A DNA stretch of 64,000 nt. It comes from Guillardia theta CCMP2712. Taxonomy: Eukaryota; Protista; Cryptophyta. Shown here piece by piece: positions 9,373 through 12,508 of the stretch. The notes beneath the pieces are model-generated. The model did not search any database and was not told the DNA's origin. It saw only the letters and a list, made by a program, of their open reading frames with translations. Every line of letters begins with the position of its first letter. The stretch's first letter is position 1. The position numbers and the translations under genes are program-made. The stretch spans positions 221,131 to 285,130 of the forward strand of contig NW_005434642.1 in the NCBI RefSeq assembly GCF_000315625.1, given 5' to 3'.

Positions 9373-10227
9373 AAGGGATGAGCTTTCTATCAGTTCTGTA
9401 AAAACTGCCCAGTCACAATGGGTTGCAGAAACAAACAGACATATGAAGATGAAGTTTCCAAACGAAACATGACAAAACTCCTTACATCTCACACCTACCC
9501 CGCATGCATTCTAACAGAAAACGATTCCTTGGCAAGGTACAACATTGAAAGCGCCATGCACGAGCCAAAGGCCGGATCGGGCCAGGGCAAGGGTCATGCG
9601 AGGAGATGGAGCGTGCACTAGCTGAGACTCAGCATGCGGCTACAGCTGCAGCAGTCCCATCATCTCACTATCGCCATCGCGAGCATCAGGCTCTCCGCCA
9701 TGGCCCGCGCTCTCAGGTGTCTCATCGCGACAGCCCCATAAGTCCCTGGAGCATGAGCGCATCTCAACCACCCCCATCCCTGGCAGGGGGTGGGTACCCT
9801 TTTGCACGATGACCCTGCATTACTCTTCATACACCCCTACTTTTAATATCTGCAACCCCTACTATGGACCGCCAGTAGTACCTTACCACCCACTCAATCT
9901 CCTCTACCCACCCCCTCATATAAACATTACCCCTTTCCACCAATTTTACCCCTCATATCTTGGCAAACTTACCCACCCCACCCTTGCCTCGATTCTTCCG
10001 AGAGCGTACGTTCTTGGGCTGAGATCTGCAATGTCCAGAGTGTGCAATGTGAACAGATGTGAACTTGCAAGAGAGCGAGAGAAGATGAAGAAAGAAAGAC
10101 AACTGAGTCGAACATGTCAGCAAAGATGCTTCTGAGTTGCCGTTGGCGATCATGCGTGCATAACAGATTGCTCAATGGTAATGTTTATTTGAGCATATGC
10201 CTACCAGCAGTGTAGTTTTCGATGTTG

Positions 10228-11841
10228 TCAATTCACAGGTGAGGAAGCGGCAATATAGTTCTCTGCCGCAACATGCAGACGAGGAGAGGGTAGCTGTCCG
10301 AGATCTTTGACGCTACTCAGGATATCAAGAAGCGACTCGAATCTCCGCAAGATCGGAGATTCCAAGACGTCGTGGAGAGCAATTGCCACCGCCTTGACCT
10401 GCGAAAAGATCGAGTATTAGTTTTAACAGGATTCCAAAGAACTGTTAACCTGTAGCAGGCCGGGGAACAAACGATCCAAAAACCGAAAGGGAAGAGTCTC
10501 CAAGGAGCCAGCCGCAGTGCTGAAGATTGAGGCAACTATCCCATTGAGTAGGATCATGTCGTTCTCAACCAAGACGTATCGCACTTTGGATACATCACGG
10601 GAAATCGAACGAACTTGAACCAGCCCGTCCTGTCCTAGTAAATAATCGCCTGTTTCAACACCCGAGGCCTGCATGAGCTGCATGCTCTCGGAGCGCTTAT
10701 CCCGACAGGGATACTTGCAGACGTGCAGGTAGTGCGGAGGTGTGAGCTCAATCTCCCCCTCGCTCGTCCCCAGCCGCACAACACGGTAGTCCTCCACATG
10801 GTCGTGGATGAAGTACACTCTCCCAAAGTCCTTCGGGCCTGGGCCGTTGGCGATCAAGTCATTCACGCTGATGTCCCCCAGCAACGCTTCTTCCACCTTT
10901 CCTCCACGTTCGACTCTTACTCTCCCGCTTGTGGAGAAGCAGCCATGGTATTCGCCCGGGTCACCCTTGGTAATAGCAAACATCCCTGCAGTTGCATGAA
11001 ACATCTCGCAGATCCCACACATCCTCTCTACTTCAGGCTCTTTGTAATAGCCACCCACCGGGGCACCGCAGACACTGGATTTCTGACCCATCCATATTCC
11101 ATCCTGCGCGACTGTACCACACGAGTCGAACGTATTGCAGGTCTCACTCAATCCTTCGATGCTCATCATGCAATCTATCAAGCTCTGTGCGTTACCTCGA
11201 AGAACAGTCCTGATCGACAGTTTGCTACACGGCGGTTTATCAATGTTGTCTGGTGTGCATTCGGTATCATTGAACGGCGCTGAGATCACACCGTCCTTGA
11301 CAAAGTCATACTTTGGATCGTCTGCCTCGCCTTTGTCTTCAAGAATATATCCACACTTGTTCCATCTGGGAAAGATGGCCTTGGCTTGCCGCACCAAACT
11401 GCTGATGGCACACGTTCGCTCTCCGGTGAACGGGTCTGCCGCTGCCGCTGCTGCATCCTCCTCATCAGTGGAGTTCCCTCCATCGCCACCAGACGAGCCT
11501 GTTGCGTTTGCAAGCGATATCATCCTTTGCTTCAAATGCATCTCATGCTTTAACTCAGTCACTGGAACATACTCCCACTGACCCAGCACCGGCTGCTTTT
11601 TCTCCGGAGCAGAACCCTGTAGCGCCTCTCCCATCCCGGCTATTCTTGAAGCTGGCAGGTAAGCCCAGTGACCCTTGACTGGAAGTGTCCTGGGGAGGTA
11701 AGCGACCTTGGGCTCTTTGCCTTGAAGCAGGGGAAGCTGCCGCAGGTCCTTGTCCTGCACCAGCAGCGCCCAAGCGCACAGGAACGCGGTGATGGCAGCG
11801 CAGAAACCCACGAGAGGAAGGAAGCGACTCACACGCGACAT
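10228..11841 (-). CDS. Signal/TM-anchored Cys-rich protein with C-terminal Hedgehog-type Hint (Hog) autoprocessing domain; 2 exons (intron 10399-10449)
   Basis: N-terminal hydrophobic segment; G|CF at Cys301 (codon 10941-10939); LGDISVNDLI; IELTPPHYL (TxxH); ASGVETGDYL; ILLNGIVASIF; amphipathic tail. A 51-nt GT-AG intron adds VKAVAIALHDVLESPILRRFESLLDIL..PVN*. Confidence 0.88.
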
Positions 11842-12508
11842 GGCTCAAACCTCTTTAGACTCCTTGTGCGACGCTCAGAAGGAGCTACCTCGAATCATCC
11901 TCGCACTTCGCCATCCGCCACGCACCCTACCTCGGTCGCCATGGTGCCCTTTCACCAGGGTGACCGCATCCCCACACATACAGTGGAATCATCCCCCTCA
12001 TCCCCATGTTACCCACATCCCCACCCAGATCCCCACCTAGATCCACACTTGCACCAGCACTTGCACCAAGCGATCCTTCATTTATTACTCAAACTTAAGT
12101 GAAAAATTAGTACCTGGACAATCAGGAGAGTAGTAGGAGGCTCGATCCGGTGTAGTTTCCGATCGGGTTGCGACTATACCACCCCACCCCACCCCACTTT
12201 TTACCCCCTCTTCCCTATTGCACCACCCCCGACGATATTATTCCGCCACTTCCTCCTCACCTTCACAGCCATCCCTCCCCTCTCCCTCCCCTCTCCCTCT
12301 CCCTCCCCTCTCCCTCCCTCGCTCCCTCCTTTAATCATTTTCTCTCTCTTCTCCTCCACCCACTCTCCCACTCCCCTCTCGCATCTCGGTGAGGTCTTTT
12401 CAACCTTGGATCCGTTCTTCTAGGACATTCGACGTGCAGGCAAGTGGGCTGTAAGAAATCTTGTTGGGAGAGGAGTCCACTAGTCTGCTCCAACCTTCTC
12501 CAGGAAGG

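What the first reader, a model, noticed from the sequence alone, without database searches (positions are those of the whole stretch)
10228..11841. Hedgehog-like self-cleaving (Hog) protein with an unrecognised 10-cysteine N-terminal domain
Seen: a hydrophobic N-terminus (res ~7-28), a linker, a ~160-aa region with 10 Cys, then G|CF at Cys301, TxxH (LTPPHYL), ASGVETGDYL and LNGIVASIF. After removing a 51-nt intron (10399-10449) an amphipathic tail follows (TLPFRFLDRLFPGLLQ|VKAVAIALHDVLESPILRRFESLLDIL), which the ORF track misses. Established: this is the architecture of Hedgehog C-terminal Hint plus sterol-recognition region, which cleaves at G|C and attaches a sterol to the N-fragment; Hog domains are known in various protists. 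Inference: a unicellular alga may release or anchor a disulfide-bonded, possibly sterol-linked extracellular product that is not the Hedge domain. The second conserved Hint Cys (the SC of NGvlaSC) is replaced by Ile, so the maturation route may differ from animal Hedgehog.
Basis: partly seen in the sequence, partly recalled or inferred. Interest (0 to 1): 0.8.

Follow-up and report, generated by a model that had tools for sequence, protein, structure and literature searches.

The report
Cryptophyte Hog self-cleaving protein, unnamed N-domain
This is a real, expressed gene of the alga Guillardia theta for a Hedgehog-type self-cleaving (Hog) protein, a kind already reported from this species in 2008, whose cysteine-rich front domain belongs to a small unnamed family that elsewhere ends in a membrane anchor instead of the Hog part.

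Summary
The gene is GUITHDRAFT_138502 of Guillardia theta (520 aa, minus strand). Residues 301-445 model as a Hint fold. A family profile hits Drosophila Hedgehog at E 1.5e-18, far better than inteins. G300|C301, T367-x-x-H370 and D347 are present. The Hedgehog C143 position is Ile/Val.

It is not new as a kind. Bürglin (2008) listed two G. theta paralogues as Hog proteins and noted the lost Cys. UniRef calls this gene Hint-containing. This scan also noted a Cys-rich Hog and a Frizzled-Hog on other pieces of this genome.

- The N-domain (8 conserved Cys, helical model) matches no Pfam, PDB or Atlas entry. It defines about 75 sequence clusters, with named members only from cryptophytes.
- 40 clusters have G|C 4-23 residues after a CGxCxM motif. 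About 12 lack Hog and end in a transmembrane, GPI-signal-like or amphipathic tail.
- The tail keeps the Pro-Phe-Arg kink of the Hedgehog sterol-recognition helix.

Best reading: self-cleavage that leaves the N-domain lipid-tethered, probably by a sterol. This is untested.

The parts
10450..11841 (-). Coding exon 1 (codons 1-464)
   Evidence: ORF. It is identical to the public 520-aa model and is covered by transcript contigs.
10399..10449 (-). 51-nt GT..AG intron, phase 0, holding an in-frame stop
   Evidence: Sequence. Contigs of runs X1 and X3 skip exactly 51 nt here, while X16 keeps them.
10228..10398 (-). Coding exon 2 (codons 465-520 plus stop)
11749..11823 (-). N-terminal hydrophobic segment (residues 7-31): signal peptide or type II signal anchor
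   Evidence: Kyte-Doolittle 2.41 over residues 10-28. AF2 models a helix at 2-31. Relatives carry the segment as far in as residues 49-67, which argues for an anchor.
11437..11748 (-). Linker (residues 32-135) with three x-x-Y-(L/V)-P motifs and two N-glycosylation sequons
   Evidence: The motif recurs 1-3 times in nearly all full-length relatives. Sequons are N112 and N123. AF2 confidence is low here.
10942..11436 (-). Cys-rich N-domain (residues 136-300). It has 10 Cys and ends in Y-Y-K-E-P-E ... C-G-I-C-E-M.
   Evidence: Eight Cys are conserved family-wide. The AF2 model is helical: mean pLDDT 69.9 and pTM 0.63 for the domain, with block means of 75-94 in its best-modelled stretches. There is no Pfam, PDB or Atlas match. 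The profile search found 75 cluster representatives.
10939..10944 (-). Predicted autocleavage junction G300|C301
   Evidence: G-C is nearly invariant in the family. It aligns to G257|C258 of Drosophila Hedgehog.
10507..10941 (-). Hint module (residues 301-445)
   Evidence: Pfam Hint. AF2 block means (10-residue blocks) are about 63-86 over residues 301-440. Foldseek gives 1at0 and 6tyy at E about 2.5e-8, TM 0.78-0.79. Profile E is 1e-16 to 1e-18.
10297..10506 (-). SRR/ARR-like tail (residues 446-498; the span includes the intron). Helix 1 carries E448, P451-F452-R453. Helix 2 lies in exon 2.
   Evidence: These positions are invariant or nearly invariant in the family. The tail aligns to A-P-M-R-L-L of fly Hedgehog and A-P-F-R-L of human SHH. 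It is amphipathic. AF2 models helices at 450-458, 466-476 and 479-498.
10177..10227 (-). 3' UTR, approximate
   Evidence: Transcript contigs end at about 10177 and 10207.
11842..11946 (-). 5' UTR, approximate
   Evidence: Transcript contigs begin at about 11941 and 11946.

Best explanation
The gene encodes a secretory-pathway precursor of the Hog class.

Proposed steps:
1. An N-terminal hydrophobic segment takes the protein into the ER.
2. The glycosylated linker and the disulfide-rich helical N-domain fold in the lumen.
3. The Hint module makes a thioester at G300-C301 by an N-to-S acyl shift, helped by T367 and H370.
4. A hydroxyl-bearing lipid is held by the two amphipathic tail helices and activated by D347 or H348. 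It attacks the thioester directly, because the residue that forms the branched intermediate in animals (C143) is Ile/Val here.
5. The N-fragment is released from the Hog part with a lipid on Gly300, most likely a 3-beta-hydroxy sterol such as brassicasterol or stigmasterol. It stays tethered to the membrane surface.

Shown here: gene structure, expression, Hint fold, catalytic motifs, tail homology, and the family pattern.

Inferred: cleavage, the adduct and its identity, topology, and what the N-domain does.
For: - Gene and splice.
- Hint fold and Hedgehog-type sequence: the model matches 1at0 and 6tyy at TM 0.78-0.79. The family profile gives E 1.5e-18 to fly Hedgehog and 3.7e-9 to human SHH, against 0.005 or worse for inteins.
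- Catalytic positions: G|C, D347 aligned to D46, and T-x-x-H. H348 is invariant.
- Tail: the alignment runs into the first SRR helix, pairing P451-F452-R453 with P379-F380-R381 of SHH. R381 is needed for cholesterolysis in vitro (PMC7242414). That paper describes the SRR as an amphipathic helix-loop-helix, as seen here.
- Anchor swap: about 12 relatives lack Hog and carry a C-terminal TM helix, a GPI-signal-like tail or an amphipathic tail at the place where Hog sits. One such gene has no Hog within 2 kb downstream. Two come from transcriptomes.
- Sterols: G. theta CCMP2712 contains brassicasterol and stigmasterol (PMC5793051).
Against: - No biochemical data exist for any non-animal Hog adduct.
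- C143, reported as required for animal autoprocessing (PMC12054796), is absent. It is Val, Ile or Glu in every family sequence counted.
- Bürglin judged SRR motif K not conserved in G. theta Hogs.
- The second tail helix shows no similarity to the H-W-Y motif of SHH.
- The D46-equivalent is Ala, Pro or His in part of the family.
- If the N-terminal segment is an uncleaved anchor, a second tether is not obviously needed.
- The single-sequence Pfam score is below the gathering cut-off.
Confidence: 0.55

Rival explanations
1. Cleavage only. The Hint module forms the thioester and water (or a thiol) resolves it. The N-domain is released without any adduct, either as a soluble secreted factor or held only by its N-terminal anchor.
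For: - The C143 position cannot act as a nucleophile.
- The D46-equivalent varies within the family.
- Hedgehog mutants lacking the SRR still cleave with DTT (PMC7242414).
Against: - The roughly 50-residue tail after the Hint module is the best-conserved part outside the catalytic motifs. E448, P451, F452 and G461 are invariant. That is hard to explain if no adduct is recruited.
- Hog-less relatives replace Hog with hydrophobic anchors, not with a plain stop.
Confidence: 0.22
2. Transfer to another acceptor. The thioester is attacked by a non-sterol nucleophile, such as another lipid head group or a component of the cryptophyte periplast. The N-domain is then fixed covalently to the cell covering, as Bürglin's neutral term 'adduct recognition region' allows.
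For: - The top fold match includes the Tetrahymena BIL2 domain (6y75).
- The second tail helix is unlike that of Hedgehog.
- Motif K was judged not conserved.
Against: - The first tail helix keeps the Pro-Phe-Arg kink of the sterol-recognition region.
- The profile is far closer to Hedgehog than to BIL domains or inteins.
Confidence: 0.15
3. Inactive Hint. The domain is a structural relic and the protein works uncleaved.
For: - The Pfam score is below the cut-off.
- C143 is lost.
Against: - G|C, T-x-x-H and the His next to the D46 position are invariant or nearly so across clusters at 50% identity or less.
- The distance from CGxCxM to G|C is kept short in 40 clusters.
Confidence: 0.05

Closest known systems
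G. theta Hog proteins crGt Hog1 and crGt Hog2 (Bürglin 2008, BMC Genomics 9:127, Additional files)
   Same: They belong to the same family. They share the CGxCxM motif before G|CF, the V-R-Y and N-G-V-x-A-S-V-x-S-T motifs, and the E-T-L-P-F-R and L-E-S-P-x-L tail. Hog1 is the gene on contig C21 (+) and Hog2 the gene on C4 of this genome. That paper also noted the replaced motif J Cys.
   Different: This gene (contig C32) is a further paralogue that the paper does not list. Over the stretches that matched in the own-genome search it is 39-60% identical to the C4 gene and 37-55% to the C21 genes. The paper did not describe the G. theta N-domain, its Hog-less relatives or the tail homology.
Animal Hedgehog C-terminal domain (Hint + SRR; PDB 1at0, 6tyy, 6td6, 7e2i)
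   Same: Shared features are the fold, the G|C-F junction, the D46 and T-x-x-H positions, and an amphipathic helix-loop-helix tail with a Pro-Phe-Arg kink.
   Different: There is no Hedge signalling domain. C143 is Ile/Val, so the branched thioester reported in 2025 cannot form at that position. The second tail helix is unrelated.
Nematode warthog / groundhog / ground-like families
   Same: A lineage-specific Cys-rich N-domain occurs both fused to Hog and in Hog-less genes (Bürglin 2008; here).
   Different: The N-domains are unrelated. Here the Hog-less forms end in predicted membrane anchors.
Frizzled-CRD-Hog gene of G. theta (contig C590)
   Same: It is from the same genome, and its Hint module is preceded by a Cys-rich domain.
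   Different: Its N-domain is a Pfam Fz domain. The N-domain studied here shows no relation to it (hhalign probability 0.1%; no Fz hit in 53 members).

Membership tests
Hog proteins (Hint + SRR/ARR; Bürglin 2008) | Hint fold | tested here: met
   In the AF2 model, 10-residue block means are about 63-86 over residues 301-440. Foldseek gives 1at0 at TM 0.78 and E 2.6e-8, and 6tyy at TM 0.79.
Hog proteins (Hint + SRR/ARR; Bürglin 2008) | Sequence closer to Hedgehog C-domains than to inteins or BIL domains | tested here: met
   The family profile gives fly Hedgehog 1.5e-18 and SHH 3.7e-9, while the best intein or BIL hit is 0.005 or worse. The single sequence scores 25.9 bits on Pfam Hint against a 29.7-bit cut-off. 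Two paralogues pass the cut-off.
Hog proteins (Hint + SRR/ARR; Bürglin 2008) | Gly-Cys junction with Cys as first Hint residue | tested here: met
   G300-C301-F302 is nearly invariant in the family and aligns to the Hedgehog G|C-F.
Hog proteins (Hint + SRR/ARR; Bürglin 2008) | Block B T-x-x-H | tested here: met
   T367-P-P-H370 is present and the His is invariant.
Hog proteins (Hint + SRR/ARR; Bürglin 2008) | Acidic or general-base residue at Hedgehog D46 | tested here: met
   D347 aligns to D46. Within the family this position is D, A, H, P or E, while the neighbouring H348 is invariant.
Hog proteins (Hint + SRR/ARR; Bürglin 2008) | Motif J Cys (Hedgehog C143) | tested here: not met
   The position is Ile439 here and Val, Ile or Glu in all family sequences counted. 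Bürglin accepted such sequences as Hog-like.
Hog proteins (Hint + SRR/ARR; Bürglin 2008) | C-terminal adduct or sterol recognition region | tested here: inconclusive
   A conserved amphipathic two-helix tail is present, and its first helix aligns to the Hedgehog SRR. The second helix is not similar. Binding was not tested.
Hog proteins (Hint + SRR/ARR; Bürglin 2008) | Self-cleavage with transfer of an adduct | not testable with these tools
   This needs biochemistry.
Hedgehog proper | Hedge (HH_signal) N-terminal domain | tested here: not met
   Pfam finds only Hint at E up to 1.
Inteins | C-terminal His-Asn followed by a Cys/Ser/Thr extein residue, inserted in a host protein | tested here: not met
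   There is no His-Asn at the end of the Hint module. The module is followed by the amphipathic tail and the stop codon.
Frizzled-type CRD | Match to the Fz domain | tested here: not met
   None of 53 members hit Pfam Fz at E up to 0.1. hhalign to the G. theta Fz domain gives probability 0.1%. No Fz or Smoothened chain appears among the fold matches.

The most novel reading that the evidence does not exclude
The N-domain is a cryptophyte surface module that must be tethered to the membrane at its C-terminal end. Evolution has met that need in three interchangeable ways: a Hog-added lipid, a GPI-type signal, or a transmembrane helix. If so, the cryptophyte Hog transfers a sterol straight from the Cys1 thioester, without the C143 branched intermediate now proposed for animals. 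This would be a natural test case for that mechanism and a view of the pre-animal use of Hog domains.
Probability: 0.3. Interest if true: 0.6.

Novelty: new member of a known kind. Interest (0 to 1): 0.35.

Why it matters
Hog proteins outside animals have been catalogued, but none has a known adduct or function.

- This family offers a compact, expressed, intron-poor example from a culturable alga with a sequenced genome.
- A conserved sterol-recognition-like helix is combined with a natural absence of C143. That makes it a useful substrate for asking whether the branched intermediate is needed for lipid transfer.
- The Hog-less relatives with predicted anchors give an independent comparative hint that the Hog part serves as an anchoring device.

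As a finding it is incremental. The architecture and the species were already in the literature.

Tried and rejected
- **Whole-protein search of PDB sequences:** it gave only a chance gelsolin match.
- **Word-index protein search:** it found just 9 relatives even with a profile. The exhaustive profile search was needed.
- **AF2 on the full length with 8 sequences:** the N-domain was left unmodelled, with pLDDT under 45. A 53-sequence alignment gave a usable model.
- **Fold searches with the N-domain model:** Foldseek PDB found nothing at E up to 0.001. VIA wide gave a best Z of 5.0, generic helical bundles. ESM Atlas gave TM under 0.4 normalised by the model, and at most 0.45 by the matched model.
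- **Other N-domain searches:** Atlas feature search found no usable hit. A profile against PDB sequences found nothing. Pfam on 53 members gave only scattered single hits.
rejected.
- **Hog-less relatives as artefacts of intron read-through:** rejected for three reasons. The tails are conserved between clusters. Two sequences come from transcriptomes. One contig has no Hog in any frame downstream. Several other apparent Hog-less entries (P0011, P0013, P0031, P0047, P0053) do look like read-through or truncation and were not counted.
- **Taxon names:** they could be recovered only for Guillardia, Hanusia and Cryptomonas. The rest are environmental.
- **Not available here:** signal-peptide and GPI predictors, and model coordinates for checking disulfide pairing.

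Full report
**Where we are.** The window is contig C32:221131-285130 of the Guillardia theta CCMP2712 assembly. The finding is the gene GUITHDRAFT_138502. UniRef already calls its product a Hint domain-containing protein.

**The observation.**
- A 472-codon ORF runs 11841..10423 on the minus strand.
- In the sequence, C-A-G|G-T at 10450/10449 and A-G|G-T at 10399/10398 bound a 51-nt intron that holds an in-frame stop.
- Exon 1 is 1392 nt, so the intron is phase 0 after Q464.
- Joining the exons gives exactly the public 520-aa model.
- Two transcript-like contigs from different studies (1689 and 1714 nt) skip exactly these 51 nt. They end near 11946/11941 and 10207/10177. A contig set that behaves like genomic DNA keeps the intron.
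- The runs are only guessed to be RNA. The precise GT..AG skip and the gene-sized contigs argue for mRNA.

**The Hog part.**
- Pfam Hint matches residues 296-442 at 25.9 bits, under the 29.7-bit cut-off.
- In an AlphaFold model, 10-residue block means are about 63-86 over residues 301-440. Foldseek places it on the Drosophila Hedgehog C-terminal fragment (1at0, TM 0.78; 6tyy, TM 0.79), Tetrahymena BIL2 and many inteins.
- A profile of 13 family members hits fly Hedgehog at E 1.5e-18 and human SHH at 3.7e-9. Inteins score 0.005 or worse. It is therefore of the Hedgehog type.
- In that alignment, G300|C301 pairs with the Hedgehog G|C, D347 with D46, T367/H370 with T-x-x-H, and Ile439 with C143.
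- C143 was recently reported to form a branched thioester required for animal autoprocessing (PMC12054796). In every family sequence I counted this position is Val, Ile or Glu, so it is never a nucleophile. If these proteins transfer an adduct, they must do so from the Cys1 thioester.
- The D46 position varies in one sub-group, but the adjacent His348 is invariant. From memory, not checked here: a D46H Hedgehog is reported to remain active. Here I saw only the title of PDB entry 6tyy.

**The tail.**
- After the Hint module the family keeps S-T-A-A-G-x-x-E-T-L-P-F-R-x-L-D-x-L-x-P-G-x-L-Q, and then L-E-S-P-x-L. E448, P451, F452 and G461 are invariant.
- HMMER carries the alignment with Hedgehog into the sterol recognition region. 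P-F-R here pairs with A-P-M-R-L-L of fly Hedgehog and with P379-F380-R381 of SHH.
- Purohit et al. describe the SRR as an amphipathic helix-loop-helix with a Pro kink, and found R381 necessary for cholesterolysis in vitro.
- Here AF2 draws helices at 450-458, 466-476 and 479-498. Hydrophobic moments reach 0.79 and 0.71.
- Bürglin judged motif K not conserved in G. theta. The profile alignment suggests that at least the kink of the first helix is conserved. The second helix shows no likeness.

**What was already known.**
- Bürglin (2008) reported Hog-like sequences from G. theta ESTs. He stated that their motif J Cys is replaced. He proposed that protist Hogs carry secreted, Cys-containing N-termini and may add a sterol or a similar moiety.
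- His supplementary table gives crGt Hog1 and Hog2 with the cleavage site marked. They correspond to the genes I found on contigs C21 (+) and C4.
- The present gene is another paralogue.
- The genome holds five loci of this family: C32, C4, two convergent genes on C21, and C54. It also holds a separate Frizzled-CRD-Hog gene on C590.

**The N-domain.**
- Residues 136-300 carry ten Cys. Eight are conserved across the family (C144, C163, C224, C235, C241, C258, C275, C278). C195 and C205 are specific to the sub-type of this gene.
- The most conserved stretch is Y-Y-x-E-P-E-(I/V)-E-x-x-C-G-x-C-x-M, just before the junction.
- With 53 sequences, AF2 gives a helical model with mean pLDDT 69.9 and pTM 0.63, and 10-residue block means of 75-94 in its best-modelled stretches.
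- It has no convincing match in any search:
  - Foldseek PDB.
  - An exhaustive VIA search, best Z 5.0.
  - ESM Atlas.
  - Pfam.
  - PDB sequences by profile.
- It is not related to the Fz domain of the C590 gene.
- An exhaustive profile search of 1.84 billion representatives found 75 clusters, 48 of them at E up to 1e-10.
- Named members come from Guillardia, Hanusia phi and Cryptomonas paramecium. The rest are environmental or MMETSP transcripts without a species label.

**The family pattern.**
- In 40 of the 81 family sequences held (the 75 from the exhaustive search plus six from the word-index searches), G|C-(F/L/I) follows the CGxCxM motif after 4-23 residues.
- About twelve representatives lack Hog. 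They fall into three groups:
  - One group ends in a short hydrophobic C-terminal stretch after small residues, which looks like a GPI signal (P0035, P0045, P0046, P0066, P0073).
  - A second group has a strong TM helix and a short basic tail (P0022, Kyte-Doolittle 3.1; P0037).
  - A third group, the closest to this gene, ends in a conserved 20-residue amphipathic tail (P0003, P0015, P0024, P0075).
- These tails are conserved between clusters. Two sequences are transcriptome-derived. A 4.6-kb contig with a group-three gene has no Hog in any frame for 2 kb downstream.
- This parallels the nematode Wart-only and Ground-only genes.
- The fact that Hog is exchanged for anchors, not for a plain stop, is my main argument that Hog supplies a membrane tether here. 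It is comparative inference only.

**Topology.**
- All full-length members begin with a hydrophobic segment. In some it lies 20-48 residues in, which suggests a type II anchor rather than a cleaved signal.
- In this gene the stretch A-W-A before L26 would also fit a signal peptidase site. That is by eye and untested.
- Between this segment and the N-domain lie one to three x-x-Y-(V/L/M)-P motifs in nearly every member, together with N-glycosylation sequons.

**Context.**
- G. theta CCMP2712 contains brassicasterol and stigmasterol (PMC5793051).
- At least nine loci match the Patched/NPC1 family. Neither fact is specific evidence.

**Verdict.**
- The kind is already published for this species, so this is a new member of a known kind.
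- Three points raise interest modestly:
  - the unnamed N-domain family;
  - the anchor-swap pattern;
  - the conserved SRR kink in a family that lacks C143.
- This scan noted related Hog genes on other pieces of the same genome.

Noticed in passing
G000:C21:338209-339588 (+) and 339860-341392 (-); loci L004, L005, L013-L018: Two paralogues of this family lie tail to tail within about 3 kb. The (+) gene is Bürglin's crGt Hog1. Neither has the intron in the tail region.
   Followed up: partly
window 10399-10449; L002 (C4), L008 (C54), L011 (environmental contig): The intron sits after the P-G-x-L-(Q/E) of the first tail helix. It is at the same place in the C4 and C54 paralogues and in an environmental relative, whose public model (P0006) reads through it into nonsense.
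   Followed up: partly
window 11437-11748 (residues 32-135) and the same region of relatives: A short motif x-x-Y-(V/L/M/I)-P recurs 1-3 times between the N-terminal hydrophobic segment and the Cys-rich domain in nearly all full-length members. Its role is unknown.
   Followed up: partly
G000:C590:2150-2914 (-), locus L023: This is a separate G. theta gene with a Pfam Fz (Frizzled CRD) match followed by a Hint match. Its N-domain is unrelated to the one studied here.
   Followed up: partly
G000, nine loci (for example C60:12988-13434, C76:432131-432604, C3:573374-573856): At least nine loci match the Patched/NPC1/Dispatched family PF02460 above its cut-off. Whether any of them handles a lipidated Hog product is unknown.
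   Followed up: no
protein P0088 (cluster of P0016): A member of this eukaryotic family is filed in NCBI under a MAG named Promethearchaeia archaeon (MGB1591733.1). It is most likely a eukaryotic contig binned by mistake.
   Followed up: no
window 10478: One low-depth contig (4.55) of run X16 lacks a single base inside the coding region. The transcript contigs do not. It is probably an assembly error.
   Followed up: no
proteins P0076, P0077, P0081: Three long proteins (1008-1654 aa) give weak, multi-stretch matches (E about 1e-4) to the middle of the N-domain profile. They may be chance matches of Cys-rich repeats.
   Followed up: no
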